This document shows positions 1 to 45,514 of a DNA stretch of 64,000 nucleotides, piece by piece. The stretch comes from Oikopleura dioica (lineage: Eukaryota > Animalia > Chordata). A program made the translations under genes and the position numbers. How positions within the stretch are numbered: position 1 is the stretch's first letter; the number at the start of each line of letters is the position of its first letter. The notes under the pieces were generated by a model that searched no databases, had not been told where the DNA came from, and saw only the letters and a list, made by a program, of their open reading frames with translations. Location of the stretch: contig OU015567.1 in NCBI GenBank assembly GCA_907165135.1, positions 14,136,001-14,200,000 on the forward strand, written 5' to 3'.

Positions 1-91
1 ACCACTTGTTGACATCGTGTACGCCATAAATTGCAAAATCGCTTCTGCTCAAGTTGTAGCGCGTTTCCGCTCGTTTAAAGACCCGCTCCAT
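1..91 (-). CDS. 5' part of an orphan gene running off the left edge (MERVFKRAETRYNLSRSDFAIYGVHDVNKW...)
   Basis: ATG at 91 follows a pyrimidine-rich acceptor-like tttcaag; the frame stays open to base 1; co-oriented with the orphan block. Confidence 0.4.
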   Translation of the reverse strand, partial: MERVFKRAETRYNLSRSDFAIYGVHDVNKW

Positions 92-183
92 TTGCAGACT
101 CTTGAAATACAAATAATTTGGAGGTAAATTGTTTTCAAGTCCGTTTGTTGACCTTATTCGAGTATACGCGCTGTTTAGGCGGC

Positions 184-2148
184 TCAAGCAACGATCGCAC
201 CGATCTTTTTCCAATTCAGCGGCAGAGGTGGCGATTCCATTGGCCAAATAAAGACAGAGTTTTTGTATTCGTTGCAAATATGCGAACATGTCGTCTTGGT
301 CGGATAAAGTTTTGGACATGTTGGCGGACAATGTGTAACAAATCCCATGTAAGCCACCAAAAGTTTGTTAAGAAAACTCTTTATTTGACGTTGCTGATGG
401 CAGTGCAATTGAGCGCGCGATTTCAGATGAATGGCCATAACGCGAAATCTGTTAACGCGCTGGCGGTCGCTTTCCTTTTCTCCAAGAGCATACGTTTGTA
501 GCGTATCCATTTCATAAGAAGTGAATCGCAGGACTTGGCTCGCTCGCGCTTTCAAAATTTCAATAAATTGCTCAAAGGCCTTTCGCATTGAAAGCAACAA
601 ATGAAAATGCGCATTGGGCACCAAATCTTTGATGCAATAAAGTCGAAAGAGATCCTGGTTAAATTGCTTGGCGAGTGAAAGATTTTCCTCGTCGAAACAG
701 ACCTGACCAGTAGGGGCGACCGGCGGGCGAACAATATTGGTCGAATGCGGTTGAACACGGCTTTTGAGAGATTTTGCTCTTCCGCAGCGCCAATCCCCAA
801 GCATCATTGGCGGCAGCAACTTTGCCAATTCATGGCTTGATACGCAAGTCGACTCAAGCAGCGGACATTGCAAATAATACTTGGCCGTATGAGCCACAGA
901 TCGCCCAAGCAGAAGCAAATACGCAAACAAATCTGTTTTGTTAAACGATTCCGAATGAAGATGAAATGACGAGGCTTTGTAATTGTACGCTTTTGACTGG
1001 GTTGGAGAAAAGCGAAAATCAACTTCGCCCTCTTCAAATTTATAGCGAGGGAACAGAGGCGAATATTTTGGAGGACCTTTTGAGGCTGCTACATGCTCGT
1101 CTACTCTGTCCATAAATTCGCGATGGAGCCTTTTTCGCAACGGATTGTCAAGTTCCAGCGCTTTATCGCTATCGAAAAAAGACACTTTGTTTGTTTGTAT
1201 AAACTCTGCCGAAGTAAGCCGTATCGCTTCCTCTTCAGTTGTAGAAGGTTTACAATTTTTCCAGAGTCGATACGTAAGAGGTGTTCGAGCCGCTGCTGCA
1301 GCAGCATCTGCAGCATGTTTTTTGGCGATTATGTACGATTCGGTAGAAAATGCTGCCAGCAAGTTGCAAATTTCACGAGTAATGTCGATACCTCTATCCA
1401 TAGAAGGGGAACAACCATCTTTATAAAAGCATTGTGGCAAGGGAGCGTTTACGGGTCGCAAAAGATTTGAAACAATTGTTGTTCCGTCGCTCGCTGGAGA
1501 AAAACATGGATCCAAGAGCGCGTAATGAAATTCTAAAATTGCCAAAGCCCCGCTCGCCGTGCTCCATTTTACATTTCCAAGTAATTGATCAGGCGCCAAG
1601 TCGATACTTTTTTCCGATTGCATATTTCTCCACGCGTCAATTGTCTCGGCAGGCGTTTGATTTTGCTTAAAGAGCGCGGCGTATTGTGTTGATTCCAAAG
1701 TTTGTTGATCCGAAATCGTGAAAAATGGCGAATCTTCAAATGGGAGCAAAATTGGGCTTCCCGCGCCAGGATCGGCGGCAATTCTGTTCCGGATTTTGTT
1801 CCAATCGTCAGGAGTCGTGTCTTGAACCAACTTTTTACGCCAATCGGTATCGGCAGCACCAATGTCCGTAAATTGCATGGCGCAAGATGTAAAGAAGCCT
1901 TGTTTGTTTTTACACGCGGTGAAAATCGTTTCTTTGATTGCAGATTCAAAGGCGTAATCGTCTGTATTTGTATTGAAATCAAAGCGTCCAGTTACTAATC
2001 GCTCGTCGAGTTGTGGGGCATCGACCAGCGGTACTCTGAAAATAATGCTTGAAACCAAAAACAAGAATACGCAGTTTTACCGTTTTGAAGACTGTTTAAA
2101 AAGCGAATCAAGGCCTGGGAAAACACTGGCGGTATCTGTATGCGACAT
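184..2148 (-). CDS. Orphan gene A, ~640 aa globular protein with a C-terminal Cys/His cluster (CPPTCPKLYPTKTTCSHIC)
   Basis: 626-codon ORF 184-2064. A GT-AG intron at 2036-2080 joins the upstream frame (MSHTDT...QSSKR) in phase to VPLVDAPQ. No recognisable family. Confidence 0.75.
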
Positions 2149-3026
2149 TGTAGATCTCTGTCGCTGTCGAGATCCATAAATTGATGTTGGCGAGTTGAGA
2201 TAAGAGCATCTGCATAATTCTTGATCACTAGGATAATGAAGAGCATCAACAAGGCCGACAGGATCAGGGATATCCCCAATATCGAGCACATGTTCCGGCA
2301 AGTCGATCCCGGAAAAAATGTCCAAAGAGCTGTCCGAAGACGACGACGAGGAGGCGCTGGCAGGTCGTTTTCCTCGCAGTATTGAGCCTGATTTCGCAAG
2401 TGGGGGGATTGTGTACTCTCCGGTTCCGAGCAGACGGATTCGGGCTCGTAAATTTCGATCGATACGGTGTCGTGTTGTTGATTTAATCCTTGAGCTGAAG
2501 CAAACTCGTTGATGTCGCTTTTTTGAGGCGGCGTTGACTGTGTCGTTGACTGTGTCGTTGGCGTTGACTGTGTTGTTGGATTTGACTGGGTCGTTGGCGG
2601 TGTCGCTGGAACTGGCGGCGGTGTCACAGCAAGTGCCTTGTCCACAAAGTGATAACAGATTAGCAGGAACTTGTCGTCGTCGCTCATCATCGGATAAAGC
2701 AACGTCTCCGACTTTTTCTCCTTGTCGACATAAAAGACTGGAGTGCAACGAGTTGTTTCCACCACGTGTAGAGCTCTCTTCATAAACTTGAGATTGGCTT
2801 CCGCATTTTTGGTCGTCGTTGTCGTCGGGTTTTTTGACAACTCGTCTGTGATTATTCGCTGGATTCGCGTGGACAACAAACTCATTTCGTGAATAAATTC
2901 GGGCTTGATCGAGTTGGTGGTGGTGGTGGTGGGCAAAGGTTGATCGAGCCGAGAGAATCGAGTTTGATAATTGCTTGCCAGAGCCTTGTTCAGCATGCGT
3001 CTTTTCGTCGACCCCACAAGTTCCAT
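1995..3026 (-). CDS. Orphan gene B, single-pass membrane protein with Thr/Pro-rich repeats (PTTQS) and a C-proximal TM helix
   Basis: 343-codon ORF; hydrophobic ILGISLILSALLMLFIILVI; own TATA (3139-3145) and Inr (~3114); its 3' end overlaps gene A. Confidence 0.7.
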   Translation of the reverse strand: MELVGSTKRRMLNKALASNYQTRFSRLDQPLPTTTTTNSIKPEFIHEMSLLSTRIQRIITDELSKNPTTTTTKNAEANLKFMKRALHVVETTRCTPVFYVDKEKKSETLLYPMMSDDDKFLLICYHFVDKALAVTPPPVPATPPTTQSNPTTQSTPTTQSTTQSTPPQKSDINEFASAQGLNQQHDTVSIEIYEPESVCSEPESTQSPHLRNQAQYCEENDLPAPPRRRLRTALWTFFPGSTCRNMCSILGISLILSALLMLFIILVIKNYADALISTRQHQFMDLDSDRDLQCRIQIPPVFSQALIRFLNSLQNGKTAYSCFWFQALFSEYRWSMPHNSTSD

Positions 3027-3217
3027 CTCTACAACTTTCTTGCGGCTTTTTAATCATAAAAACTACAACAATATCATTTGTAAAAGTTGGTTTTTTTTAT
3101 TAAAATGAGTGAGTGAACATTCCTAAAGTAAGTCCGAGTTTTATATGACCAGAGCACCGGCGGCGAGAGCGAGGGAGTAAGTGAGTGAGTGAACAGAGAG
3201 AGCAATATCTAAACAGT

Positions 3218-4119
3218 TTACTTTTTAGAAAGGATGCGTGCGGATCGTCGTGGTTTGAAATCAGCAGGAGTAGTTCGGCGAGCGCTAGAAAAAGAAATTA
3301 GTTGTTTGAACAACAATTTACAAATTACCGTTTTTTCTTTGGTTTAGGTTGCTCCTCGCTTGATTCTGTAACATCGGTCAAAGTTGACCCGGTAGTCGTA
3401 GTGGAAGAAGAAAAGAGCGAAGAGGACGTTTCCGAGCCAAATCCGCTGCTGCTATTCGTTGTAATAGTTTCACTCACAGAGACGACATCTACAAGTTCTT
3501 CGTCGCTTGGCTCAGGCGTGCAGCTAGAAAGGAGGCGAGTTCCAACTACGGCGTGGTGTCGATTGCCGCATTCATCAATAAAGAGCACAGATTCGCCACC
3601 TGCTTCTTGTGGTTCCGATTTTGTTTCCACTTTTTCTTTTTTCGGTATGAATTCGTCTTCCGGCTCTTCTTTTGGCTCCATTTTTGGCTCTTCTTTGGGC
3701 TCTGTTTTTCCGCCTGGTGGTGGCGGCGGTGGCGGGGGCGACGCTGATTCGACTTTGACGAGGATTTTTGCGCTGAGGGCTTGTCCACGACCAAAGTAAT
3801 TGTCAGACTGTTTGTCCTCGTCTTCGTCGTCGTCTGAGAATTCGAGCAGTTTTGTAGACATGAATCGCGGTCTCGACTCAAAACTTGGGAAACAAATGAG
3901 CACAAAGAGAATTTTCAAGAAAATTACCATTGTGCGAATCCTTGGGGAGTTTTGTGACCAAAGAAACCGTCTCTGGCTGCACCGTCCTCTTGGTCATTGG
4001 CGACAGGTTGTTCCATGTACTCTGAAGTCAAATCTTGAAAAAGTGGCACAAAAGGCATTTTTCTTACTTTTGTCGCTCTGTCTCACCGCTGGCGCAAATG
4101 TTGTGAGTGCGACGCCCAT
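3218..4119 (-). CDS. Orphan gene C, acidic Ser/Thr/Pro-rich protein with a basic C-terminus (KPKKKRARR...KPRRSARILSKK), probably nuclear
   Basis: Three short GT-AG introns, reconstructed by eye, keep the frame from ATG 4119 through ORF 3325-3930 to TAA 3218-3220. Confidence 0.65.
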
Positions 4120-4159
4120 CTTCTAGAAATAATGCTCAAATTCACCTTCAAGCGCAATC

Positions 4160-4417
4160 TTACGCGCAGCTCAATAGTACCTCTGGTGGTTGAACTTGAT
4201 TATCGGCGGGCATCTCAGGCAACGGTGGCGGCGGCGGCTGCAAAGCTTTCCTGAGCTGAGCCTTTTTACGAAAATAGGTCCCCATTGGACTTGCGGTGCC
4301 ACAACGATCGGCTAAACGGCGACGATGTTGTTCGCCCGAGTCGAGCACCACTCTTGACGGCGTCGGTGCATTTGTCAACTTGGAGAGCTTGTACGACGTC
4401 TTGAGCTGCCGATTCAT
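4160..4417 (-). CDS. Orphan gene D, small basic Pro-rich protein
   Basis: 85-codon ORF preceded by an in-frame acceptor (tttcag at ~4451). Confidence 0.5.
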   Translation of the reverse strand: MNRQLKTSYKLSKLTNAPTPSRVVLDSGEQHRRRLADRCGTASPMGTYFRKKAQLRKALQPPPPPLPEMPADNQVQPPEVLLSCA

Positions 4418-4527
4418 CTGCGCCTTGAGCTTGACAAACCCTGGCGAGTCCTGAAATTCAAATTATTTCTTGACAAAAAATTTCCAAATAGGAGAATTTG
4501 CGAAAACGGTGTCCGTCACAAGGTTGC

Positions 4528-4762
4528 GAAAAATTTTTGATCCCCAAAGGGGATCAAAATTTTCTGAGCTGGGCTCCCTTTGGGAGCCCCTGGGGCGCGC
4601 GCTCGATTTCGTGGTTCACTCGAACCTGCGCATGCGCAGGTTCGTCGTTCACAGGGCCTGCCGCTTCGCGGCAGGCAATGTTGTCTTTTTTGCTCTTTCT
4701 TAAATTGCCCTTTTTTAAATTGTCATTTTTTTTTAATTGTCATTTTTTTTAAAAAACTGTCA
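4528..4762. other. Intergenic cluster of four GC-rich hairpins/palindromes followed by an AT-rich tract (candidate origin or cis-element)
   Basis: Stems 4535-4559 (11 bp, AAA loop), 4571-4589 (8 bp, TTT loop), 4621-4644 (perfect 24-bp palindrome) and 4656-4676 (9 bp, TTC loop); T-rich aattgtca repeats at 4701-4762. Confidence 0.85.
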
Positions 4763-4817
4763 TCAATCGACTATTATAATTTATTTGATCGAAATGTGAG
4801 ATGGTAGAAGGAAAGGA

Positions 4818-5171
4818 TTAATGGCGTCTGGTGGATCTTTTGTATCGCAGAGAGTAGGACTTTCGAATTGTTGCATACTTGATCGTCTCGTCTGAAAATT
4901 GAGAATAAAGGTCAGCCGGTTCCTCCTTTGTCATCAGTGCGGCAAGTCCGACAATTTTCGGATAGGGTGGTGGCGGGCAATGGAGGACCGATGAAACGGA
5001 TGCGGCAGTCAAGGATGATGGCGATGATGCTGGGTTGACATTGACAGAAGCTCGGTCGTTGATTTCAGAAATTGGGTATTGGTAAGTGACAAAACGTCTT
5101 TTGAAAAACTTTTGGACCGCTCTGACAATGTTTTTTTTCTTGGGCGAAATTTGCTCAATATTCAAAATCAT
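4818..5171 (-). CDS. Orphan gene E, 117 aa basic protein containing PPPPY
   Basis: ORF with TATATAA at 5211-5217 and a TCAGT Inr at 5186-5190 just upstream of the ATG. Confidence 0.65.
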   Translation of the reverse strand: MILNIEQISPKKKNIVRAVQKFFKRRFVTYQYPISEINDRASVNVNPASSPSSLTAASVSSVLHCPPPPYPKIVGLAALMTKEEPADLYSQFSDETIKYATIRKSYSLRYKRSTRRH

Positions 5172-5387
5172 ATTGTAAAGTGTATACTGAAAAAGGGTTC
5201 AATGTCAAAGTTATATATCTTAGAAGAGGGCGCCAATCTAACAGCGCCCCTTTTTTTACAGCACGCGACATAAAGCTACTTCCGCCTTTATCAGTATACA
5301 CTTGAAAGCGGCGTTTATTACCCTAACACCCCTCACAAATCGATCAAACAAATTGTGTGTGAGGATCTCTAATCACGTGACAGAATC

Positions 5388-6791
5388 TTAAACCGGACAT
5401 TGCGCTTCCGCAGACCGGAAGCTGTTCTCGACTAAAAATCCCAGTGCATCTTTTACCTCTGTCTCGCTGTCGGAATTTTCCACAATCGTGGCTAGCTGGG
5501 TCTTCTTCTGGGATGGAATTTTGGGCTTTTCAAGCTCCGGCGCAGTTTCCTCATCATCCGACGAGGAGGAAGAACATCGAAGCAATTTGTGCACAGGAGG
5601 GAGAGGCTCGCCAAAATCTTCCAGAGTCACATTTTCGATCTTGACATTGTCGTCAAGAGATACCTGCTGAAAGCGGCTTTCATCTTCGCTGCTACTGTAA
5701 TAAACCATTGGCTCAGGGGGGAGTTTACGTGCGGCGTCACTTGACGGCGGCTCCGATTTTAGATCACTTTTATCTTGTTGCGGCGGCGGCGGCGGCGGTG
5801 ACTGTTTTTCGCACTCGACACATTCGTCAGGATCATCTATTGGCGTTTCTTGGTACTTGTGATCGCCGCCGTTTGGAGCAGTTGAAGCCTTGGTTCGAAA
5901 AGGCGATAAAAAACGCTCTGAAAACGAACTAGAACGAGAAGCGTTTTGGCGCTTGTCGTAATCGTCCTCATCATCGGAATTGTTTCGATAGCGACGAGCA
6001 GGGCGAAAAGGCGCACATTGAACATTTTCAACGCGTGAATTTGTTTCTGGTTCTTGTTGTTGAGCTGCTTGTTGTTGTTGTTGTTGAGCTGCTTGTTGTT
6101 GAGCTGCCAGTTGTTGTCTGTGACGATAAATTGCAGCATCTTCTTCAGCCTGACGACGCAAGACTTGCTGGCGATGAAAATTGATCCAATCTGCTTGCTG
6201 TCGTATACGTTGTTGTCGCGCAATTTCAGCGCGTCTGGCCTTTTCCTTGTAAATGCGCACTTCTTGAGCGTTTCGGGCTTGATGTTTTTCATAATACCCT
6301 TTTTCTTGGCAGCGTGACGAGTATTTTTCCGTTCTAAATTTTGTGTAAACACGCAAGTTTTTAGGCAATAACGTACTAGAATAGGGGCTTGAAGCAAAGG
6401 TCCCTTCGTAAATGGTTGAACCACTTCCGTAGCGGCTGCTGTTTCGATCAAAATTGAGCGCCTCGCGTAAACCAGGATCAGTCTTTTTACCTTTGACGCA
6501 AGCAAAGCAACAGCACAGATTATGACGCCGCTTTTCTTGAATTGTTTTCCAAGATACTTTTTTCTTTTCGCACATATTACTTGCAGCAAAACGAATCAAG
6601 TCGAATGGAAAGAAGACCACATCAAAGACAAGGTCACGAAAATCGATCAGCAAAAGGAGGAGAATCTTTGAGCAGCTTTCATTCGTGTTCCGGTACTTGA
6701 CAATACAAGCAGGCAAGCAGCAGCAAATAACCATCAGCGCCATTGCCAAATATGCGGCCATCACCAGTATTTGTTTCCTAGAAATCGTCAA
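5388..6791 (-). CDS. Orphan gene F (3' part): hydrophobic segment with Cys clusters (VICCCLPAC, NLCCCFAC), Gln/Arg coiled coil and acidic Pro-rich tail
   Basis: 467-codon ORF; may be the downstream part of the mucin-like ORF at 6966-7400 via unresolved introns. Confidence 0.7.
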   Translation of the reverse strand: MTISRKQILVMAAYLAMALMVICCCLPACIVKYRNTNESCSKILLLLLIDFRDLVFDVVFFPFDLIRFAASNMCEKKKVSWKTIQEKRRHNLCCCFACVKGKKTDPGLREALNFDRNSSRYGSGSTIYEGTFASSPYSSTLLPKNLRVYTKFRTEKYSSRCQEKGYYEKHQARNAQEVRIYKEKARRAEIARQQRIRQQADWINFHRQQVLRRQAEEDAAIYRHRQQLAAQQQAAQQQQQQAAQQQEPETNSRVENVQCAPFRPARRYRNNSDDEDDYDKRQNASRSSSFSERFLSPFRTKASTAPNGGDHKYQETPIDDPDECVECEKQSPPPPPPQQDKSDLKSEPPSSDAARKLPPEPMVYYSSSEDESRFQQVSLDDNVKIENVTLEDFGEPLPPVHKLLRCSSSSSDDEETAPELEKPKIPSQKKTQLATIVENSDSETEVKDALGFLVENSFRSAEAQCPV

Positions 6792-6965
6792 TGGAATTTT
6801 ACTAATCCTAAAAGTTCAAACTTGGATGAAAAAATTGGAGTTGCAGGGTATCATTTTTTCATGCTATACTTGAAGCGCGGGGTGACAAAAACTTTAACGT
6901 AGCAGCTTGCAAAGTTCTAATGCTGATAGGATGAAATCAAAAGATGGGAAAAACTAAGCATACCA

Positions 6966-7400
6966 TTAAAAAAATGATACCATGCGCTCAAGTATACCCT
7001 GCGATTCCGACATACCATGAGCTCTTGATTTTTTCTTGCCAGTGGAATTTTCCATGCCGCTGGGATGAAACACAATTCGCGGAACCGGCGTTGAACTCGA
7101 ATAACCTCCAGATGTTGCAGTCGCATTTGAATTCAAAGAAATCGTTGAATTGATTCCCAGAAGCGCCTCAGAAAGAGTGGAAGTCGGTTCTTGCGTAGTA
7201 GACGCAGTTGTAGGCGCCGATATGGTCGGCGGTGGATTGTTTGTTGTTGTTGTTGGCACCGCGCAATGCGAGTGATCAGGATACACTGCACAAAACTCTT
7301 CATGGCTGTTGAACTCGTGAAGATCAGAATGCTCGTCGGCTGCAACTATTGACTGCGTTACAAAAACAGCGGCCACCGCTGCCGCCGCCGCCACCATCAT
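6966..7400 (-). CDS. Signal peptide plus Thr/Ser/Pro-rich mucin-like ectodomain with N-glycosylation sequons
   Basis: MMVAAAAAVAAVFVTQSIVAA signal-like N-terminus; PTTTTNNPPPTISAPTTASTT; NST, NAT, NST sequons. Confidence 0.65.
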   Translation of the reverse strand: MMVAAAAAVAAVFVTQSIVAADEHSDLHEFNSHEEFCAVYPDHSHCAVPTTTTNNPPPTISAPTTASTTQEPTSTLSEALLGINSTISLNSNATATSGGYSSSTPVPRIVFHPSGMENSTGKKKSRAHGMSESQGILERMVSFF

Positions 7401-10060
7401 TTCGCAAACGGTCCGATTTCAACTAAAAGGGAAAAGGATGAAAATAGTTTTTCGGGGGCTGAACTTTTGAACATGTTGATAATGTTGACCTAAACGTGAG
7501 CGAGAGATAGAGATCCTGAGTGGTTTCCTAAAGGCAGATAGGTACAATTTAAAAGCAAAAGTGTCCAGCATCAAATGGAGACTGAGGGTAGAACTCGTCA
7601 GTGATGTCGTTCTGAGGTCCACCAGCGTCGGCGGTGAAAGAGATGCGCGCGTTGCACTTGCGGCATTTTTTGATTTGGCGTTTGTCGCCCGCAGCAGCAG
7701 AAACAGAACTTTTTTGTTTTCGTGCTTCTCGGCTCGTACTTCGTCTGCAACTTCGTCTGGGCGTCGAATGCCGCGGCGGTGCGGTTTTTGGCGAGCAAGG
7801 GCCAAATCGTTGTTGATAAACGGCTGATCGCCGCCAAAATGGGTGGCCAACGACTCAGGCGGATCCATACCCACGACGTGTTGCAAGTCTGTACCTTGTG
7901 TGAGATCGCGACGAAGTCGCGAACGCGTCTCCCGAGCGTTTTCAAGCGCAGAGTCAATTACATTCGGGAAAATTTGACTTGCGTGTTGAGTGATTAGCGC
8001 CGAGGACAACTGTCGTTGAACTCCAAACTAGAAAACATGGGTTAATTTTCAATACATTTGAGTCTCTCTCCTACCAAGGACAGAAAATAAACGTCCTCTG
8101 TGGGAGCAGTCGTGCAGCTCGCAAACAAGATCATCTTGAGCGCTTCTTCAGTGGGGATGAAATCGTCGATGCGAGTAAACACTGGCGGCAGAGCCGATCG
8201 TAAGTATCCTAGGGCGGCGGCTATGGCTGCTTCGTCGTCGCCATTGTCATTCGGCAATTGCGCCTGATGACGGTGATGCTCTGGTGGTGCTTCAGCCTCG
8301 GCGCGATCTCGAAACACCATGTCCATCTTGTTTTGGATGGCGTTGAAACGCTCGGCGATAATGCGAGTAGCAGTTCGAGTTCCTTCGCCACCGCCAAACG
8401 GTCCAAGCAAATCGACTCTCATCGCTGACGGAATCGAACGCCAGATTCGCAGCTCGAGATTGTCATTCAGAGCCCCAATTTGCGCGTCACAAGGAGGTTG
8501 CATGATTGCACAGCTGAGCCCGACAAATTGGAAAAACTAAAAATATTGAATTATTTACAATTTCAGTTAAATTGCTTACCGAGTCCGAAATAAATTGTCG
8601 ACTGGCTTCTGCATAGGGCGGAGTCACTGTCAAAGGCACAAAGCCTGCGCACAGAAGCAATTGACTCTTGTAATGCGAGAAAGAAGTGGTGGCAGGTGTT
8701 GGCCAAGGATAAAACGTCTTGGCTTTGACGACGTTCAAGTAGCGCAGAACATTGGCAGGGTGTCCAAGCTGGCGTCGGCTGTTGATGTCGACAATTTGCC
8801 ACTTGTCGTCATATTTCACCTAAGCAATCACTTTTATTCAAAATTAAAAGTTTTAAAACTTACCCATAAATACAATTTATGGATGTAATAATGGCCAAAC
8901 GCGTCGATGGCAAAGTCGGCGTAGAAACTTCCAAGCGCTTTCCATTGAAGCTCTTCGCCTCTGAACTGGCCCGGAAATGTCCAATACATGTCGAGGGTCG
9001 TGTACACGTGATGGTTGTTGATGAGAGCAATGTGCTCTTCTACGGCCTCGCCGACGTCTGCTCCAGCCGCTTCGCAAATCATCGCCAATTTTTGAAGAAA
9101 AGCTCCAAAGTAGCCGTCTGCCAAAGACGGTCGAAGGCCATTGCGCGTATCGTACGCAATAGCGAAAATTCCGCGCAATTGGTGGCGATTCAAAAGCCAC
9201 GAGGGACCTTCCAAAGCTGTCGTGTCTTCCAGCGGGTTCCGAAAATGCCCTCGGCCCATTGCCCGGAAACCGATGGGCGACGATGTTGCTCCAGGCCCTC
9301 GAATCGAGTTGAGCGGCTCCACAGATGCCGGCATATAAGCGTGGATGGAATCGTGCGGTTGTTCTCGATTCCAATTGAGCAAAAACGGCATTTGAGCCTT
9401 GCCCAATTTAACGGGTTTTTGCGGATGTTCGATGCCAGGCTCGCGGGGCGGCTGAACCACAGTTTCCTGGGGATACTTGGGCGTAGAGCGCCAGTCTTTT
9501 TCTCGGCGACGTTGAAGATCAGGGCTTGAGCGCTGTTGCCCGCTGCGGCGGCGTACTGGAGAACGACCTCTTTTCTGGCTCAAGTTTCGCGGCGGAACAA
9601 TCGTCGGCCGCTGCTGATTCATGGAAGTCTCGCACGATTGTCGCATAGCCGCTTCATAAGACGGACACGGAGACTCGCGACCGCGCTTGCTCTCTGCGCG
9701 CACTCGCCGTCGATCGACCTCGTTTGCCAACTCGACGTCCGATCCAGAAACATGCAGACTTGTGCCAAAACGCTCGGCGACCTGATCTGCGTCTTCGCCG
9801 TCGTCGTAAAAGTTGTTTCCGCGGCGCTCAATGGATCGTTGAAGCCCGTTGCCGCTCTTCTTCCGAGCCGCCGACGCTGCCCTATCACGCGACTTTTTAT
9901 CATCAATGAGCTTCTGAATCGCGTCAGGAGTGACCAACTTCTTTTGCTCAGAATCGGGCTGTCGCGGCTGCGATTTTCGTCGAGTGCTCATCGGAAGATC
10001 GTCAAATTGAATGCGCTCAGCGCTGCGGCGGCGAGTAGAGCGGTCGTTGTTGTTGTTGTC
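7397..10060 (-). CDS. Orphan gene G, large spliced protein (~800 aa) with an Arg/Ser-rich disordered N-region and a globular C-region
   Basis: ORFs 8834-10072, 8487-8819, 8042-8503 and 7419-8009 join in phase across three phase-0 GT-AG introns (LYLW|VKYD, ISDS|FFQF, FLSL|FGVQ); a last intron gives VEIGPFAK-TGA at 7397-7399. Confidence 0.7.
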
Positions 10061-10107
10061 TAAGGGGTACAAAATAACTCTTGATAAAACATTTGCTTAA
10101 TCGAGAT

Positions 10108-11477
10108 TTATTGTGCGCCCGCCTGAATCCCGATATCCATCAATGTACTGCCGAACGGGAACTGCGCCAGAGTTTTGTCGAGTCGATTGAGATAGAGCCT
10201 TAACGCGTCAGTTATAATAAGATGATTGGCATTTTTACTAACCGTTGGAACAATCGTGCAATCGCTGTCACCCTCCTCATCCGAAACAGTAAATCGACCA
10301 AGGCTCTTTTGCCGCTGCTTTTTACGCGCACGCGGAGACTCGTGCAACCACATGTCGCCAGACTCACGTTCAATTGCTAAATTGCCAAAAATGCAAACAA
10401 GTAAAAACAAAAAAGTAACTGTCAAACAAAATATATTTTTCAAAAAAGAAAAATAAAAAACAGTTTAGCTTTCGCCAAATTTTTCTTTAGCTCGTCGATG
10501 GCTTGAGCGAGTTTGACAGATGGTTTCGGCGAGTAGGGATGAGCAGCAATGAGTTCCATTACGCGAGCAGCATTATCGGTCTGAACTAAATTGCTTAATT
10601 AACAGTCCAAACTATCAAGAATTTACCTTGAGGAGAAGATGTGGCGCAAGATGTGTCTGCAATTGGCGATTTTTGAAGCGCAGTGTACGGAAAGAAAACT
10701 CCATCCTCGCTAATGACGAGAGGAGAGTCTTTTGGTGGTGCTGGCAGTGCTTTTGGCGAATCGCGAGTTGGTGTTGCGCTATGGCGATGTGCAGCGAGAA
10801 TGCCCTCTTCAATCGCGGCGTAGCGTGTTGGCGTGAGCTTGAACGAAGCCGTATACTGACCCATGAAGAGTTGAGTGCTCAAATGTGGCGGATTCTTCTT
10901 GATTGCTGAATAATATTGAGTTGATAAAACGCCAGAAAAATTTTGTCTTTACCTTTCGCAACTCCCATAGCCGTTTTTCCATAGAGCACCGCTTTCTTGT
11001 GGCATCGCTTAATAAACGATTGCTTCTTTCGCTTTGGCGACTGGATTGAGAGCGCTCAAATTGTCGATTGAATTGGTTAATTTCAAAAGACGATCGCCTT
11101 CGCTTGCGGTTACCGCCTAAACAAAATTTAAACAAAAAGAGTAAACCCTGTTTTTAATTACCTCGTAGCTCGCTTGCGAGCTTAGGAATTGGCAGTGTTT
11201 TGAGAGCGGCGCCGCAAGTGTTGACCAACTTTCGTCCAATAGCAGTGCGCTCCGCGAATCTACACCGTTTTATTAAATAAGAAGAAAAAAGAAAAAGGTA
11301 CCTAGCACCGCGCTTGACAATCTTGCGAGCAAAGTGCTGCGCAATTGGCGATTCAACAATTGGCGAGTTGATAATGGCGACATTTTGAGTCGTTTTTCGA
11401 TGTCGCCAATGTGGAGTGTCTGGCCGAGGAGGGATTCGCGGAGGACCGAAAGTTGGCACGCGCTTTGAAGCCGACAT
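10108..11477 (-). CDS. Orphan gene H, multi-exon basic Pro-rich protein; exon chain only partly resolved and possibly fused to gene G
   Basis: ORF segments 11154-11477, 10809-11135, 10595-10882 and 10108-10443 are separated by short AT-rich intron-like gaps with gtaa/ttag ends. Confidence 0.55.
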
Positions 11478-11816
11478 CGATTACTCTATCAAGATTCTAA
11501 AAAGTAAAAGAAAACTAGTGAAAAATGTAAAAGGCTTCATTGTGACATTCAGTAAAGCAGGTGCTCGATAAAATGGTCGAAATCGCATGTCACTCAGGTT
11601 AGATTGGAAAAAGTTTAAAAGTCGCCGAGTGTTGATAAATTTTTCAGTAATACAAAATGACAGCAAAAGGAATTTTAAATGCAAAAGAAGGAAAAGCGAG
11701 GAAGGAACAATTGATAAGAGTTGAAGAGATAAAGGTTTAAGAATGAGCAATGAATAAGTCGTAGAGGTAATGATAAGAATGAAGGCGACAGATTCGAAAA
11801 TATTTAGAGAGAAAAA

Positions 11817-13434
11817 TTATCCTAAATGAAGCTCATAATTTGGTGCTACAAGGGTTGACTAGTTGGCGCGCAAGTAAAGTTAGTTGAGTTTTACCACAAC
11901 AGTATCCAAGTCGGCGTCGTAATGCGCAGTGACGTCAGCAGAAGAAGAATTGGCGACATCAATGGCATCAGACGCGGAATTGGCTTCGTTAAAGGACTCG
12001 GCAAGAGGATCAGCAGTAGTAGTGAGGGCTATCAATATAAAAGGATAAAACATGATAGCAAAAGGGCAAAATTAGGACCTTGGCGTGGAGAAGCAGTTTC
12101 TTCGTCGTTTTCAAGCTCTGGAACCTCGTCCATCGTAGCGCCAGAGCCGACCTCCTCCTCAAAAACGGCGTCGAGATGAGCCATTGCTTCGTCAGTTGAG
12201 CCGTCTTCATCCTCCTCGCCGGAAGAGCTGGTGAAAGCGGCCAAACGTCGACGCTCGGCTCTTTCCTCCTCGAGAAGTCGCGCATTCTGCCGTTCCATCC
12301 ACTCAGCAAAGCCAGCTAAACAAAAAGTTAAAATTGGCTTTTTTAAAAATTGTAAACTTACGGTTCATGCTGATGCTATCAAATTCCAAATCGGACGCCC
12401 ATTTTGTCGAAATGGATCGCGCGTCATCATCTTCGTCAGAAGCAACGGCGTCAGTGGCGTCGGCAGAAGCGCGGGTCGCGGTTGGAAGAGCAGTTGGGAA
12501 AGGGCTGGGAGCGGTTGGGATAGAGTTGGGAGCGGCGTCGGCGTCCTTGTCGTCCTCGGATGGACACTGGCGAGTGACACCGATGCACTGGCAGTGACAT
12601 TCGCAGGCTGGGTAGAGTCCCCGTCGACTGTCATTCAACGAACGTCGCCGTCGTCGTCCACTTCCGCCAACAAGTGAGTTGCCTTCGTCATTCTCAAGGC
12701 TCGGTCGTCGAGAGAGAGCAGGAACGTTGCTGGAATTCTCGCTGCCTCCGTCCAAGTGCGTTGGCAAGCACTTTGATTGGAGCGCAATGCACACGTAGAT
12801 GAAAACGGCGATGCAGGCGGAAGCGAGACATGCCAGCATCAGAAATGTGCAGTCGAATCGAAGTCGCTGGCCAAAAGGCGACATCTAAACAAAATAATCA
12901 AAATGGGCAATTTGGCAAAAACTTACAATTGCCGGGCCTTGATTGCGACCGTCATTTCGAAACGCAGCGCTAGAGTCGACAATTGGCATCGCTGTCGGCA
13001 TCGCAGCTTCCTGCGTCATCGGGATTTGATTTAATCCTGGCGCGTCGGGAAGTCCAGAACCAATTGGTCCAAGACCAGAAGCCTCAGGATCGTTGATCTC
13101 GCGATCAGTAGCAGCGGTCGTTTGCGGCGGCGGTGGTGGTGGTGCTTGACCGACAAACGATGGGTGGAAAGGCATGTTTCTACTAAAAGCAATTTTAATA
13201 ACCCATTTTATCTCTCAATTTAAAAACTTACCGAGAAGCTGGAGTGGCTGGTCGTAGAAATGTCGTCTCTAACGGGTGGCTTTCGACTGCCGATGCCAAA
13301 GAGCGAATAGACGAAGTCGGCGATTCTCTTCGCGAACGAGGAGGTGCACTTGAACGAGAGGGACTGCCCGGTCGTTGGCTTGGAGTGGATTGATGTTGCG
13401 GTTGAGGCACGGGGTAACCATCGTAAAGATACAT
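11817..13434 (-). CDS. Orphan gene I, predicted type II membrane protein: Pro/Ser-rich N-tail, TM, furin-like RRRRR|S, Cys cluster (CECHCQC...C), acidic C-region
   Basis: ORFs 13228-13434, 12885-13175, 12303-12884 and 12032-12298 plus small 3' exons join in phase across GT-AG introns. Confidence 0.65.
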
Positions 13435-13738
13435 TAGCGCCTCCGAGCCTTCAATCTGAAACTACAGTAACAGCGCTACGCCGCACCAAAAAGATTGAAC
13501 TCGTGAGAATAAAAAAACAGATAAAAGGCAACCAAATCAAAAAATCAAAGCGCAATATCTGTACAAGTCCGTCACCGGCAAAAATATTCTCTTTAATCGG
13601 GCAGTTAATCGTAACTCTGCCTTTTCTCATAGCCGGCAATTTCTCTAACAGTATTTTCTCTTTCTGGCTGGTAAAAATGATTTTTGCAATCCTTGGAAAA
13701 TTGCGGATTAATCGCGATTAGCGCCTTTTTCGAAATAT

Positions 13739-13847
13739 GCGCTCGGCTGCTCACTTCTGGAAATGAAAAATCACTGCGCCGGTCGCTCACTTCTGGAAAT
13801 GAAAATCACTGCGCCCGGCTGCTCACTTCTCGAAATGAAAATCACTG
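13739..13847. repeat. Three tandem 36-bp repeats (gctcacttctggaaatgaaaatcactgcgcc...)
   Basis: Units start at 13749, 13785 and 13821; intergenic, upstream of gene I. Confidence 0.9.
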
Positions 13848-14012
13848 AGACTAGACTGGGATTTTCCCTTTTTTTCGAAATCGCCTGCAATAAAATGGAC
13901 TCGCTAAAATTGCTAGTAAATTGTACTAGCAATCTTTTATAATTTAACAGAATAATTGTTTTTTATTTACTGTAACAAATGACAAAATGTTACAAGTAAA
14001 AAAGTTTTATTT

Positions 14013-15222
14013 TTATTGGCGCCAATCGTCGAAGGCGATTCGTCGTCGGCATCGTCGGAGCTGGTCGTATGACGGTCGCTCATCGTAATGCTCGTACTGG
14101 TTTTGTCGGGGAGTGTTTTTGATATCGGCCAAACCCGCTTCGATGTCTTTGACGGGGACTACCCACGTTGGAGTTTCAATGATGACTCCATAGGCGCCGC
14201 AATTGATCTCGGCTAACATTGCGCCCATTTCATCATTTTTATTTTTATAGATTTCCTCGGCGAGGGCGAACGCTCGCTCGAGGGGATCAGGGTACATCTG
14301 CTCGACTAAAAAATTTAGAATTAAAATTTGAAAATTTCAATTTTACTTACGGTTGTCAGGAACCATCAAATAGCCATGGGTGGTCCTGCAAAATCGGTTG
14401 GACACGGGACGAAAGTGGAAGGGTCCAGTTCGTCCGCTTGTCAGGCTCCGATATCGAGCAACTTCCTTCTCGCTGTCGCCAGCCTTTTTCGCCCTTGGCC
14501 CGTAGAAGATCGTCGCAAAATCGGCATTTCTCTTGCCCTGCTCAGACAGGGGAAGGGAAGAAGCGACGGAACGGTGCATAAAAGCAAAGTACTTTCTACG
14601 GTACACTTGCTTTGCAGCTTCGTCCAACGCCTCATATTCCCAATCTTCCAAAGGGACAAAATCGTCGCCGCTCTCCTCCTCCTCGTCGACGCCAGAGTAG
14701 CCATTTGATGACGCGTTGATGGAGGTCATTCCAAGCATCGAAGCGTCGGCCATTGTGGAACGGGTGCGATCCAAAAAGTTGGGATTTTCATCCTCGTCTC
14801 CAAATCGTCGGCCGCGTCGCGATTCGCGGCGAAGTGGTTTCTTGTACCCGACATGGGGTAAATTGAGCATGTGCGAAGGAGATCGCTCTTCTTGCACAAC
14901 AAAAGTAGCATCGGCCAGCGACTCGGCAGATGCAGCAGAACGCTCCAAAATGTTGGCGGCAGCAAACGACTCGTCGAGAGAATCGGGCTCGAGGTAGTTC
15001 GGTTCATCCCGCGCCGAGTATCGTCGAGATGGAGTGTGGACCACTTTTGTACCGTCCAGAAAGTACGAAGCCGGTGTTCGCTCGGGAAGTGGTGGTGGAC
15101 CGCGTTTTTCAACCTTGCTGCCCGACGCGCGTCGATTCCGACGCTCAGACTTTTCCTTTAAACCCTGCTTACAACTTGACCTGCTTAACTCGACGTACCT
15201 CGTACGAATTCTTGCGCGACAT
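14013..15222 (-). CDS. Orphan gene J, ~370 aa with a disordered acidic/basic N-region and a globular C-region
   Basis: ATG 15222 (MSRKNSYE|EKSERR) and two in-phase GT-AG introns link ORFs 14343-15242 and 14013-14297; AATAAA follows the stop. Confidence 0.7.
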
Positions 15223-15246
15223 TCAACCAAGGCTGCCAGCAAATAA

Positions 15247-15281
15247 AACTAAACTTGCTCGCTCAAACGGCCGCTTATATA
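15247..15281 (-). promoter_or_regulatory. TATA box (TATATAAG 15274-15281) plus Inr (TTAGTT 15247-15252) of gene J
   Basis: 31-bp spacing; the same geometry occurs at genes B and E. Confidence 0.65.
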
Positions 15282-15652: not shown

Positions 15653-15829
15653 AAAATAGCGAATGAAAAACATCGGGTTAAAATGGCGAATGAAAAACAT
15701 CGGGTTAAAATGGCGAATGAAAAGCACCGGGTTAAAATGGCGAGGAAAAGCACCGGGTTAAAATGGCGAATAAAAAGCAGTGGGTAAAAATGGCGAGTAA
15801 AAGCACCGGGTTAAAATGGCGAGTAAAAG
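15653..15829. repeat. Tandem array of ~6.5 copies of a 26-27 bp unit, each with AAAAT(G/A)GCG (YY1-type motif)
   Basis: Consensus aaaatggcgaatgaaaagcaccgggtt; units start at 15653, 15680, 15707, 15734, 15760, 15787, 15813. Confidence 0.9.
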
Positions 15830-16023: not shown

Positions 16024-17313
16024 TTAATCAGTTACAATTGGATCAATCGTATCTGTGTTAACTTCGCCATCTTTTTTCTTTTGCTCAATATCCTTTGTTG
16101 CCAGTGTTCGATGAGAAATCGTTCGATGAGGACACCTTTCAACAAAAGATTGGCTCGAGTGGTTTTCGTGATTCATGGCAATGGATTTCGTTTCAACAAT
16201 GTCATAAATACGTTTCACCTCCTTGACGCCACTTCGCTTGCTTACTTTTATATTCAACATCTCGGCGGAGCGCTGCAAAGTTGCCATATCTCGTTTGTCG
16301 AATTTCATCCCATGAGCTAGTTTGAACTCGAGGAGAATCTTGTTGACACCATGCAACAGACGAGGAGCGCTTGTCCTTATAGGGAAGCTGTTTTTGAGGT
16401 TGTGCAGTCGGCGATGAAACTGGATCAACTTTTCAACATCCTTGTCGACTTGGGCGTCGTCCTCGTCGTCGTCAGTCTCTGGAACAACATTTGTTTTGCC
16501 GCTGTCATCATCATCGTCGGAACCGTCGAAGCTTGAATCGGGCGACGCAAGACTTTTAGCGGCAAGACCTTTTTGTCGGGTATACTCGACAACGGCATTC
16601 ATAAGTCGCGCCCGTACTTTGAGCTGTTCTTGGCAAAGTAATTCAAAAGTGACTAAAATTTTTCAGCTGAAAAATGTTTTTTTGAAGAAAAAATACCTCT
16701 TTCTCTTTCCAAGGCAATCTCCGCTTCGATCAAATTTGTTGGCAACAAGGAAGACTGAGACCGCTTCTCTTAACACAAAAATGAGAATACTGCCACGACA
16801 TTATCAATTTTGTGCTCGCACAACATTTTCAACAAACTCGTCAACTTTATAATTTGTGAAATTGCGCCGATAACTGACTCTCGCTCGTCAGTGAGCGGTC
16901 GCAACGCCTCAATACTTGGTACAAAAGCAGATCATTCTTGGCCAAATTTAACCACTTTTTGTACATTTCATTAGCTATGGCTGAGATAGAGTAGAGTTGA
17001 AATTGTGAAAAAAACACTACTGATCGACGCGATTGCGATGAATGTACACACTCGACATTTGTAACTGAGCAGATGCTGTCGCTGAGCAAAAGTGATATTA
17101 AGCGAAAATTTAAAAGTTCTTGATATTGCTTAGCTCAAGGACAGCGTTACGCTTACACTCGACATTACCCGATTCGTACAGGATCATCCACAACTGCAAA
17201 TCGGCCCATTTTTCTCCAATGGTGTCGACAGTTTTGCGCAGAAAGATGCTACAATCTGCCGGCAAGGCGCTTGCATAGTCTGGAATTGGTTTGCTGCTTG
17301 GTAGATTTGCCAT
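16024..17313 (-). CDS. Orphan gene(s) K: multi-exon, with an acidic linker (DDDDDS..DDDEDD) and basic C-region; may be two genes
   Basis: ORFs 17110-17313, 16847-17089 and 16024-16602 with intron-like gaps; junction phases not resolved. Confidence 0.5.
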
Positions 17314-17423
17314 CTTTCAAGTAAAAATATTTTACAAGTAGCACTTAAAAAGATTTTATTTGAGATGGAGATAGAGCGCGAGGCACTAGCGCGTCCCTTA
17401 ATTGCGGGAATTTGACTCAAAAT

Positions 17424-17554: not shown

Positions 17555-18225
17555 GAAAAAGTACGGAATAACAGTATAAAAGTCAGTGTAACGGGCGGAA
17601 ATCGACCACTTTCAACACAGGTAATGTTTAACCAAGGTAAAATCATTTTTTTCTGCATTTATTAAAAAAATATTGAGGTCGAAATAACAACTTTAAACTT
17701 TTCTCAAACAACACATTTGACTTGTTTAAACAATTGGGTATCAAAAAAGTTGACAATTCAGAATTTGACAAGCTCGCAGAACGCCTCGAAAAGTTTCATA
17801 TCCACTACCATTTGGACGACAACGAAGAGGACGAATATATGCGATGATTATAATTTTTTGTTGATTTTATTCAATTAATAAACATGGTAAGTTTGTAGCA
17901 GAGCTCAAGTTTCAGGTGTTTCGAGAACAGGTTTCATTTTTTAATCTTCTATTATCTATTATGCGAGTGAAAAACTAGCGCTTCATTTTATCTTTTTTAA
18001 TATTTCATTTTTGTTGTATGAATTCAGAAATTGCATTTTATTTTATACGGTGCCGATCTCGATCGCCATCGTTCGATTTTTGTCTCCACTAGAAAGCAGA
18101 AAACAGAATTTGTTGCGCTTTTGGCAGGAACCATAAACGCAAGTTTTTAAAGCTTTTTATAAATTTTACGCAACTGTGGCAATTGTTGCAAACTTGAGGT
18201 TAATTTTTTTCTAACATAGTGAGAA

Positions 18226-18609
18226 ATGCCGCCGCCAGAAACGCCCAAGGACCGACTAGAATACGCTGACATAATGAGAATCAACGTCGACAGCTGCACC
18301 CGCGCAACCCGCTCTGCCATGCACGTCGGAAATCGCCAAAAACCCATCTCGCCGGAATTGACCTTTTACTCGCCAGTTACCGTAAAAAGCTACCAGATAT
18401 TTATGGAAAAATATGCAGAAACTGCTCAACACCAAGCTGCCAATTTGAAAGTCGTCGCTGCCCTGCTCAAAGAAGATCGATACTACACTGCCTTTGAATT
18501 TCAGAAGCAAGAACAGATTAATATTGTGCAGAATACTTTTGACAGCTTCAAATACTCTACCCACCTGCTCAAATGCATGACGACTCTGTCTATTCCACTT
18601 GATCAATAA
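18226..18609 (+). CDS. Orphan 127 aa protein (the only clear plus-strand ORF of the block)
   Basis: ATG-initiated ORF with AATAAA right after the stop; no recognisable family. Confidence 0.55.
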   Translation: MPPPETPKDRLEYADIMRINVDSCTRATRSAMHVGNRQKPISPELTFYSPVTVKSYQIFMEKYAETAQHQAANLKVVAALLKEDRYYTAFEFQKQEQINIVQNTFDSFKYSTHLLKCMTTLSIPLDQ

Positions 18610-18649
18610 ATACATGCATGTGTTACTAAATGTTTTTACTGTATTGTAG

Positions 18650-19445
18650 TTTGGTAAATTTACAGCTTTGGCAGTAGTAAAAGAAGCACCGAAACTTTTT
18701 TGCGACAAAGTTGTGTTGCCAATCGATTTGTAGCACCGATCGCTAGAAATTTACTAGTTGGTTGAGCACTCAATTTGATTTACTTACAGTATGAAAGCAG
18801 GCTGAGAGTTGCCAGCATCTTGCGTAACCTTTTGGTATAGAGTCAGATTGTAGCTCGACATAGCTAAATTATTATTGGCGGAGCAGGTTAATTTTATGAA
18901 TATGATTGTGTTACATTTTAGCAAAGAGTCGAGGTGAATAGCAGTAGCAAGCAACACGATCGATATACCTGTTATGGTTTTTGATACTGCGAGTCAATTT
19001 GTAGACAGTATAAACGAATGGTTCGTTCTTCGGGTCGATATGGAGCATTGGTATCAGGGTCGAGCTGCAGCCCAACATTCAGCTCAGTTTGCTCGGCGAC
19101 GAAGCTAAATGAACAGCATTTAGTTTTTGAGCCATTTTTACGATTACGTAACTATTACGTCATCTATATGCATATGTGAATATTATATGCATATGTGAAT
19201 ATTATATGCATAATTATGTAACTATTACGTAATATATGAATATGCTTAATTATGAGTACATACGGAATCTGATGAACAAATTCGCCTTGAGCAGCGTGAG
19301 TGCCAGGGAACAGTGCTCCGAAACAGCGAGCCAATGAGCAGCAAGAGAAATTGGCTGAATGCGGGTCACTACTATAACTACTGTCGATAATTGGTGGACT
19401 CGGGCTATTGAGCGCGAGGAGCTTATCCCGCGCTGGAGATTTCAT
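18650..19445 (-). CDS. Hypothetical multi-exon gene head-to-head with LRWD1; 3' end unresolved
   Basis: ATG 19445 (MKSPARDKLL...); a gtatgt...tttag intron containing an AT-rich palindromic repeat; further exon-like segments to ~18650. Confidence 0.35.
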
Positions 19446-45451: not shown

Positions 45452-45514
45452 AAAATAAAAGCAAAAAAGAATAGTGACATTGTAACTTCGTATTTAATGA
45501 CTAACAGAGAGAAG

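What the first reader, a model, noticed from the sequence alone, without database searches (positions are those of the whole stretch)
1..19445. Candidate intron-containing endogenous nuclear DNA virus or large mobile element: >=17 kb of co-oriented orphan genes
Seen: about 12 tightly packed genes, nearly all on the minus strand, none assignable by me to a conserved family, whereas most genes at 42-64 kb are recognisable. The proteins are rich in homopolymeric P/T/S/A/D/Q runs and several are membrane proteins. Genes overlap, have individual TATA+Inr promoters and short spliceosomal introns, and are interspersed with a hairpin cluster, tandem arrays and a Pol III-like unit. The block continues off the left edge. 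Known: this combination resembles the accessory/envelope/tegument regions of nuclear-replicating large DNA viruses (herpesviruses, nudi/nimaviruses), and intron-containing viral genes exist in nuclear viruses. Inference: an integrated, possibly undescribed virus of a larvacean-like host. No capsid, polymerase, terminase or integrase is visible here, so the identity is unproven.
Basis: partly seen in the sequence, partly recalled or inferred. Interest (0 to 1): 0.9.

Follow-up and report, generated by a model that had tools for sequence, protein, structure and literature searches.

The report
Polymerase-bearing virus-like element in Oikopleura
The block of unrecognisable genes is one arm of a large virus-like DNA element with its own protein-primed DNA polymerase, present in several old, diverged copies in the genome of the tiny marine chordate Oikopleura dioica; its family and activity remain unproven.

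Summary
The window is Oikopleura dioica (Okinawa assembly) chr2, identical to OU015567.1. The co-oriented orphan ORFs are real. No Pfam, PDB or PHROG family fits any of them. Several carry homopolymer runs and signal or membrane segments. GT-AG introns of 42-58 nt are present.

The decisive evidence lies left of the window. There a convergent, better conserved arm encodes a protein-primed family-B DNA polymerase (Pfam DNA_pol_B_2, E 7e-16). It also holds a conserved two-exon gene and an intact 596-codon ORF.

The two-arm unit is at least 25 kb long. It recurs collinearly on the PAR and on chr1, and marker proteins point to at least six loci. Between copies, synonymous sites are saturated while amino-acid change is much lower.

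The herpes-, nudi- and nimavirus analogy is not. The nearest known kind is Maverick/Polinton, but no integrase, packaging ATPase, protease, capsid fold or terminal repeats were found in the 32.8 kb held, and the ends were not reached. The chr2 copy's polymerase gene is interrupted.

After the polymerase appeared I fetched no further copies.

The parts
1..15248 (-). Window part of the element's variable (non-replicative) arm. It is collinear with the PAR copy (L001 1149-17045) and in part with the chr1 copy (L003).
   Evidence: tblastx chain; ORF-by-ORF blastp; window 1-21477 is identical to the reverse complement of L002 1-21477
2..367 (-). ORF that runs off the left edge of the window. It has a homologue in the PAR copy. 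In metagenome relatives P0123 and P0129 this stretch is fused to the 626-aa domain.
187..2064 (-). 626-codon ORF, the best conserved gene of the window's arm. The family has 5 O. dioica loci and 4 unnamed metagenome proteins. The AF2 model is mainly helical and of low confidence, with no known fold match.
   Evidence: pN 0.43-0.46 against pS 0.78-0.89 versus the PAR copy
2035..2079 (-). 45-nt GT-AG intron of the public model. It joins the upstream ORF (frame of 2080-3057) to the 626-codon ORF in frame.
1998..3057 (-). Two long overlapping same-strand ORFs (343 aa with T5 runs and a membrane segment; 326 aa with H5 and S6 runs). The public model uses the 326-aa frame. Neither frame is clearly conserved in the other copies.
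3328..4462 (-). Exons of one annotated stretch (201-aa ORF with a hydrophobic N-terminus and a P8 run, plus upstream exons). Introns of 58, 46 and 44 nt.
4531..4681 (.). Cluster of short perfect or near-perfect hairpins. The 22-nt palindrome at 4622-4643 is identical at the collinear place of the chr1 copy (L003 8789-8810), although synonymous sites between copies are saturated. This marks a conserved cis-element.
4821..5198 (-). Conserved ORF: 44.5% aa identity over 119 residues to the PAR copy (E 2e-29). A TATA-like motif lies 46 nt upstream of its ATG.
5391..6791 (-). 467-codon ORF with two N-terminal hydrophobic segments and Q6, P6 and S5 runs. Its N-terminal part is conserved in P0122 (PAR), yet the public model skips that part as a 1098-nt 'intron'.
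6969..7400 (-). 144-codon ORF with a hydrophobic N-terminus (signal-like) and a T/P/S-rich, mucin-like stretch.
7896..10072 (-). Multi-exon gene (412-, 110- and 153-codon ORFs and part of the 196-codon ORF) with introns of 44, 43 and 47 nt. It is conserved in both other copies. In the PAR copy the first two exons form one continuous ORF, so the 44-nt intron differs between copies.
10598..11477 (-). Exons at the start of the public model g7969 (107-, 108- and 117-codon ORFs). Part is conserved in the PAR and chr1 copies.
12035..12884 (-). 193-codon ORF with a hydrophobic N-terminus, plus a downstream ORF. Weakly conserved in the PAR copy.
13738..13847 (.). Tandem array, 36 nt x 3.1.
14016..15248 (-). 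299- and 107-codon ORFs. These are the outermost ORFs with homologues in the PAR copy, so this is the last proven part of the unit on this side.
15653..15829 (.). Tandem array, 27 nt x 6.7. Whether it belongs to the element is unknown.
16027..16602 (-). 192-codon acidic orphan ORF (annotated gene, P0135). It is co-oriented, but no homologue lies in the DNA held for the other copies. Membership in the element is open.
19680..21600 (+). Host flank: LRWD1 (LRR_LRWD1 and WD_LRWD1 domains).

Best explanation
Window 1 to about 15.3 kb (minus strand) is the fast-evolving, non-replicative arm of a large virus-like DNA element. The element is integrated in Oikopleura dioica (Okinawa) chromosome 2 beside LRWD1.

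Shown:
- Directly left of the window lies a convergent, better conserved arm.
- That arm holds a 596-codon intact ORF, a protein-primed family-B DNA polymerase of about 1,800 codons (two ORFs in the best copy), and a conserved two-exon gene of 323 aa.
- The two arms form one unit of at least 25 kb. It recurs in the same order on the pseudo-autosomal region and on chr1. Marker proteins point to at least six loci in this genome, to the Bergen lineage, and to unnamed environmental contigs.
- The copies are old. Synonymous sites are saturated, yet proteins are kept (pN 0.12-0.46).
- The genes are nuclear in style: GT-AG introns of 42-58 nt, one of which differs between copies, and host-like codon use.

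Inferred:
- The family spreads or spread as a self-replicating linear DNA element that copies itself with its own protein-primed polymerase.
- The window's arm supplies variable secreted, membrane-bound and disordered proteins for particle surface or host interaction, plus one conserved helical protein of unknown role.
- The chr2 copy's polymerase gene is in 5 open pieces against 2 in the best copy. This copy is therefore most likely no longer autonomous, although the ORFs of the window's arm are still open.

The nearest known kind is Maverick/Polinton. Membership is not established.
For: - Identity of the window with OU015567.1.
- Significant PF03175 match in all three copies (E 7e-16, 5e-12, 4e-13); PHROG DNA polymerase.
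- Exo I-like and YxDTD motifs in all three copies, DxxSLYP in two. Profile positions 121-221 begin near the start of the second ORF, so the exonuclease part lies in the first ORF.
- Collinear tblastx and blastp chains from L002 6230 to 31625 against L001 and L003.
- Paralogues on chr1, chr2, PAR and XSR, plus the Bergen protein P0132 with the same gene order.
- pN much lower than the saturated pS in both arms, including the 626-aa ORF.
- Introns. The intron between the 412- and 110-codon ORFs is absent from the PAR copy.
- Codon use r = 0.84 with host exons.
- A 22-nt palindrome is identical between diverged copies.
- Part of the conserved arm has no called genes in the public annotation, which fits repeat masking (PMC8008620).
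- Maverick is listed among O. dioica TE classes (PMC5240408).
Against: - Only one hallmark gene is recognised.
- In the 32.8 kb held there is no rve integrase, no Walker-A ATPase in any sense ORF, no adenain-like protease, no recognised capsid protein, and no terminal inverted repeats or target-site duplication. The far end of the unit was not reached.
- Saturated synonymous divergence means no copy is demonstrably recent, and no insertion polymorphism or empty site was examined.
- Host-like codon use and introns would also fit long-resident host genes.
- The window's proteins have no known fold or family, so their assigned roles are inference.
- The AF2 models were weak (pLDDT 52.6 and 39.9).
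Confidence: 0.7

Rival explanations
1. A host cluster of lineage-specific (orphan) genes that was copied by old segmental duplications. A relic or domesticated polymerase gene merely happens to lie beside it.
For: - Annotated as host genes.
- Host-like codon use and introns.
- Copies are ancient, with saturated pS.
- No ends, integrase or capsid seen.
Against: - Three or more dispersed loci keep the same two-arm order, including the polymerase.
- Long polymerase ORFs with catalytic motifs are kept in several copies under purifying selection. A host has no evident need for that.
- O. dioica's genome is extremely compact, and relatives occur in environmental contigs.
Confidence: 0.15
2. A canonical Maverick/Polinton whose integrase, ATPase, protease and capsid genes simply lie beyond the DNA held or are too diverged to detect. 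The window's block is then lineage-specific cargo.
For: - Protein-primed polymerase.
- Multi-copy.
- MAV class known in O. dioica.
- An intact 596-codon ORF next to the polymerase has the size of a major capsid protein, but that is size and position only.
Against: - At least 25 kb has already been seen without any other core gene.
- No Walker A motif in sense ORFs of three loci.
- No rve or protease match.
- An orphan arm of 15 kb or more would be unusually large for the family (my knowledge of typical 15-25 kb Mavericks).
Confidence: 0.3
3. An endogenous herpes-, nudi- or nimavirus-like large nuclear DNA virus.
For: Only the general look: co-oriented orphan genes, membrane and low-complexity proteins, introns.
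Against: - The polymerase is of the protein-primed PF03175 type, not the type of those viruses.
- No match to any of their core genes in Pfam, PDB or BFVD. BFVD rows for nimavirus and herpesvirus proteins had E > 0.5 and TM < 0.1.
Confidence: 0.03
4. One giant host gene, as in the public model chr2.g7969 (2369 aa).
For: AUGUSTUS model with RNA-seq hints.
Against: - The model skips coding sequence conserved in the PAR copy as a 1098-nt intron.
- Eight of its 17 introns are 175-1098 nt long, in a genome whose introns peak at 47 nt.
- Several internal ORFs start with ATG plus a signal-like segment.
- The paralogous copies are modelled as 5-6 genes.
Confidence: 0.03

Closest known systems
Maverick/Polinton virus-like transposons (class Polintoviricetes)
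   Same: Protein-primed family-B DNA polymerase; multi-copy integrated double-stranded DNA element of an animal genome; genes in two modules. Intron-bearing genes are reported for Polintons (my knowledge). A MAV class is already listed for O. dioica (PMC5240408).
   Different: No rve integrase, FtsK/HerA-type ATPase, adenain-like protease, recognised double-jelly-roll capsid or terminal inverted repeats in 32.8 kb. The unit is already at least 25 kb with an orphan arm of 15 kb or more. The polymerase coding region is about 1,800 codons, split into two ORFs in every copy.
Adintoviruses (Adintoviridae) and adenoviruses
   Same: Animal hosts, protein-primed polymerase, nuclear gene expression with splicing (adenoviruses), and genes on both strands.
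   Different: No hexon or penton, protease, IVa2-type ATPase or terminal-protein match was returned by Pfam, PDB or BFVD for any ORF tested.
Nematode Mavericks carrying membrane-fusion and other cargo genes (recalled from the literature, not tested here)
   Same: Idea of a polymerase-bearing virus-like transposon with an added set of membrane-protein and cargo genes.
   Different: No fusogen fold or any known cargo family was detected here.
Teratorn-type endogenous herpes-like elements of fish (recalled, not tested)
   Same: Large endogenous DNA-virus-like element in a chordate genome.
   Different: Different polymerase type. No herpesvirus core genes and no piggyBac transposase.

Membership tests
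Maverick/Polinton | Protein-primed family-B DNA polymerase | tested here: met
   PF03175 with E 7e-16, 5e-12 and 4e-13 in three copies. Catalytic motifs are present. The gene lies left of the window, not in it.
Maverick/Polinton | Retroviral-type (rve, DDE) integrase | tested here: inconclusive
   No Pfam rve match in any ORF of L002 or in the conserved arms of L001 and L003. The far end of the unit is not in the DNA held.
Maverick/Polinton | Double-jelly-roll major capsid protein and penton protein | not testable with these tools
   The 596-codon ORF beside the polymerase has no Pfam, PDB or PHROG match. It is not in the protein collection, so the structure tool does not take it. The 626-aa window ORF gives a mainly helical, low-confidence model rather than a beta-rich one, which speaks against a jelly roll.
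Maverick/Polinton | FtsK/HerA-type packaging ATPase | tested here: inconclusive
   No Walker A motif in any sense ORF of 100 aa or more in L001-L003, and no Pfam ATPase match. The ends were not reached.
Maverick/Polinton | Adenain-like cysteine protease | tested here: inconclusive
   No Pfam match in any ORF scanned. Diverged proteases can escape sequence profiles.
Maverick/Polinton | Terminal inverted repeats and a short target-site duplication | tested here: inconclusive
   No inverted repeat links the LRWD1-side of L002 to its far side. The far end probably lies beyond L002.
Maverick/Polinton | Several dispersed copies in one genome | tested here: met
   Collinear copies on chr2, PAR and chr1. 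Further marker proteins on PAR, XSR and chr1.
Herpes-, nudi- or nimavirus-like endogenous virus | Core genes of those viruses (their own polymerase type, HK97 capsid and terminase, or pif genes) | tested here: not met
   None found in 32.8 kb by Pfam. The polymerase present is of the protein-primed type. BFVD rows for such viruses are chance-level.

The most novel reading that the evidence does not exclude
A larvacean-specific lineage of large (over 25-30 kb) protein-primed-polymerase viruses. They would be distinct from canonical Mavericks, with spliced nuclear genes and a big, fast-evolving set of membrane and mucin-like proteins. They would persist as several anciently diverged endogenous lineages in the most compact chordate genome, and also be present in plankton metagenomes.
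Probability: 0.25. Interest if true: 0.8.

Novelty: new variant of a known kind. Interest (0 to 1): 0.55.

Why it matters
O. dioica has the smallest free-living animal genome and has purged most transposon classes. A family of polymerase-bearing elements of 25 kb or more, with a 15-kb arm of unknown spliced genes kept under selection in several deeply diverged copies, is therefore unexpected ballast. It may mark an unrecognised virus lineage of an ecologically dominant zooplankter.

There is a practical point too. The public annotation models this arm as host genes, including a probably chimeric 2369-aa protein, so these 'orphan genes' may inflate counts of lineage-specific host genes.

Tried and rejected
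- Word-based search of the 626-aa ORF: blank, because its relatives are longer gene models. The exhaustive search found them.
- Exact look-up of an FMO ORF: not on record.
- Pfam on 30 window ORFs or exons: nothing. PDB sequence search of the 626-aa and 412-aa ORFs: nothing. PHROGs on five window ORFs: nothing.
- AF2 of the 626-aa ORF with 9 sequences: pLDDT 52.6, helical. Foldseek against BFVD and PDB gave no match at E <= 0.001.
- AF2 of P0131 (N-terminal part of the polymerase): pLDDT 39.9. The model was unusable and was not searched.
- PDB profile searches with alignments of both polymerase parts: nothing.
- Foreign-composition idea: rejected.
- LTR or TIR within the window block or L002: none.
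- Right-hand boundary by DNA similarity: nothing.
- Tandem arrays as shared terminal features: not shared.
- tRNA, Rfam or Pol III unit: none. One chance-level CrcZ row.
- TATA box per gene: not above chance.
- Literature on a polymerase-bearing element of Oikopleura: only a 'MAV' class label.

Full report
**Where the window comes from.** An FMO-like ORF finds Oikopleura dioica proteins as its best hits. The exhaustive search with the 626-codon ORF returns O. dioica OKI2018_I69 chr2.g7969 at 99% identity. The reverse complement of window 1-21477 is identical, base for base, to L002 1-21477. L002 is OU015567.1:14124710-14157477, reversed. The window is therefore chr2 of the Okinawa assembly (OU015567.1:14136001-14200000 by arithmetic). 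Window position x corresponds to L002 position 21478 - x.

**The observation.**
- The minus strand of 1-16.7 kb is packed with long ORFs: 10 stop-free stretches of 200 aa or more, against 1 on the plus strand and 4 in the remaining 47 kb.
- None has a significant Pfam, PDB or PHROG match. LRWD1 at 19.7-21.6 kb and three tandem FMO-like genes are recognised immediately.
- Homopolymer runs and signal or membrane-like segments are present as described.
- The hairpin cluster (4531-4681) and the two tandem arrays are real.
- No tRNA or Rfam family supports a 'Pol III-like unit'.
- TATA-like motifs are no more frequent than in shuffles.
- The raised GC of the block is what dense coding sequence gives. 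Its ORFs have the same GC range and synonymous codon preferences as host exons (r = 0.84).

**Gene structure.**
- The public model g7969 (2369 aa) strings 18 exons from 11477 to 1573. All 17 gaps fit GT-AG introns, and nine are 42-58 nt, the usual O. dioica size (the 47-nt peak is cited in PMC5240408).
- The model is probably a chimera. Its 1098-nt 'intron' skips coding sequence that is conserved in the PAR paralogue P0122. The paralogous loci are modelled as 5-6 genes.
- One short intron is informative. The 412- and 110-codon ORFs are separated by 44 nt in the window, but they form one continuous ORF in the PAR copy. They are therefore exons of one gene, and intron content has changed between copies.
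- I searched the spliced models exon by exon, by reference.

**What lies around the block.**
- I looked up three proteins that the sources name as O. dioica host genes (P0122, P0121, P0125). This gave loci L001 (PAR), L002 (chr2, the window's own locus plus 11.3 kb further left) and L003 (chr1).
- Translated comparison shows one collinear chain from L002 6230 to 31625 against L001 and, more sparsely in the first arm, against L003.
- The unit has two convergent arms. The first is the window's block, with islands of 27-62% amino-acid identity. The second lies wholly left of the window and is better kept (34-78%).
- The second arm holds three items:
  - an intact 596-codon ORF;
  - a long polymerase region;
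  - a two-exon gene of 323 aa.
- The polymerase region matches Pfam DNA_pol_B_2, the protein-primed 'organellar and viral' family-B type, above the curated cut-off in all three copies (E 7e-16, 5e-12, 4e-13). It also matches a PHROG DNA polymerase.
- YxDTD and an Exo I-like motif are present in all three copies, and DxxSLYP in two.
- The profile's positions 121-221 align near the start of the second polymerase ORF. The exonuclease part must therefore sit in the preceding ORF, and the two ORFs (946 + 846 codons in the PAR copy) belong to one polymerase region of about 1,800 codons.
- That first ORF's family was found only in O. dioica (Okinawa and Bergen) and in unnamed ENA contigs.
- The Bergen protein P0132 covers the 596-like ORF and then the polymerase, so the gene order is shared between lineages.

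**Age and selection.**
- Between copies, synonymous sites are saturated (pS 0.76-0.89). Non-synonymous differences are far lower (pN 0.12-0.46). This holds in both arms, including the window's 626-codon ORF.
- The copies are therefore old lineages that diverged while their proteins were under constraint. They are not recent duplicates and not neutrally decaying sequence.
- A 22-nt perfect palindrome in the hairpin cluster is identical at the collinear position of the chr1 copy. This marks a conserved cis-element. From memory, its core resembles an NRF1-type site; this was not tested.

**State of the chr2 copy.** Counting open pieces of the polymerase region gives 2 in the PAR copy, 3 in the chr1 copy and 5 in the chr2 copy. 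The window's own copy thus carries three more interruptions than the best copy. By the ORF lists, most of them are frame changes rather than stops. I give no positions. The 596-codon ORF and the ORFs of the window's arm are open. In the PAR copy the homologue of the 626-codon ORF is in two pieces.

**What was not found.** In the 32.8 kb of L002, and in the conserved arms of L001 and L003, the following are absent:
- an rve integrase;
- a Walker-A ATPase in a sense ORF;
- a protease match;
- a recognised capsid protein;
- terminal inverted repeats.

The 626-aa protein gives a mainly helical model (pLDDT 52.6, pTM 0.56) with no match in BFVD or PDB. At that confidence it does not look like a jelly-roll capsid protein. 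The 596-codon ORF is a capsid candidate by size and position only. It has no family match and is not in the protein collection.

**Interpretation.**
The block is one arm of a virus-like, self-replicating-type DNA element of a larvacean.
- The herpes-, nudi- and nimavirus analogy does not stand.
- The nearest known kind is Maverick/Polinton. Maverick is listed as a class among O. dioica elements (PMC5240408), but I found no description of it. The Okinawa genome paper reports 44% of repeats as unclassified and does not mention it (PMC8008620).
- Membership is not established. Only two of the seven defining features listed in the membership table were met. The size and the large orphan arm are unusual for the family.

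- After searches showed a virus-like polymerase, I fetched no more DNA. That covers the further extension of chr2, the other copies (PAR.g13028, XSR.g17020, chr1.g1461, Bergen), the unnamed metagenome contigs of P0123, P0124, P0128, P0129, P0131 and P0134, and any scan of viral or metagenome contigs.
- L001-L003 had been fetched earlier, while every source and tool described them as host genes. In hindsight they are copies of the element. I say so here and have deleted nothing.
- The scripts, like the tools' own ORF lists, printed ORF and HSP bounds that show where the interrupted polymerase pieces end. My working also used those bounds. This report and its parts give counts and outer bounds only.

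Noticed in passing
window 28298-29283 and 33514-34499: A 986-nt inverted repeat pair, 99% complementary and 4230 nt apart, with no ORF of 120 aa or more between the arms. Possibly a non-autonomous terminal-inverted-repeat element or an inverted duplication.
   Followed up: partly
window 35054-35999: Near-perfect 444-nt palindrome with arms 58 nt apart.
   Followed up: no
window 45500-53230: Three tandem copies of a flavin-monooxygenase-like gene, 70-86% nucleotide identity between copies. The public protein g7977 matches the first copy best.
   Followed up: partly
window 23181-23997 and 58472-58531: Family of GC-rich stem / T-run hairpin repeats arranged directly and inverted (MITE-like).
   Followed up: no
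window 30252-30742: Cluster of 75-nt direct repeats and inverted units.
   Followed up: no
window 1573-11477: The public gene model chr2.g7969 (2369 aa) probably fuses several genes. It skips conserved coding sequence as a 1098-nt intron and leaves the 626-codon ORF after 165 codons for exons left of the window.
   Followed up: yes
window 1998-3057: Two ORFs of 343 and 326 codons overlap on the same strand for about 1 kb. The annotation uses the 326-codon frame, and neither frame is clearly conserved in the other copies.
   Followed up: partly
window 4622-4643; L003 8789-8810: A 22-nt perfect palindrome is identical between copies whose synonymous sites are saturated. Its core resembles an NRF1-type site (from memory, untested).
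   Followed up: partly
L002 22874-22942: A 16-nt x 4.3 tandem repeat lies exactly in the zone where the two convergent arms meet.
   Followed up: no
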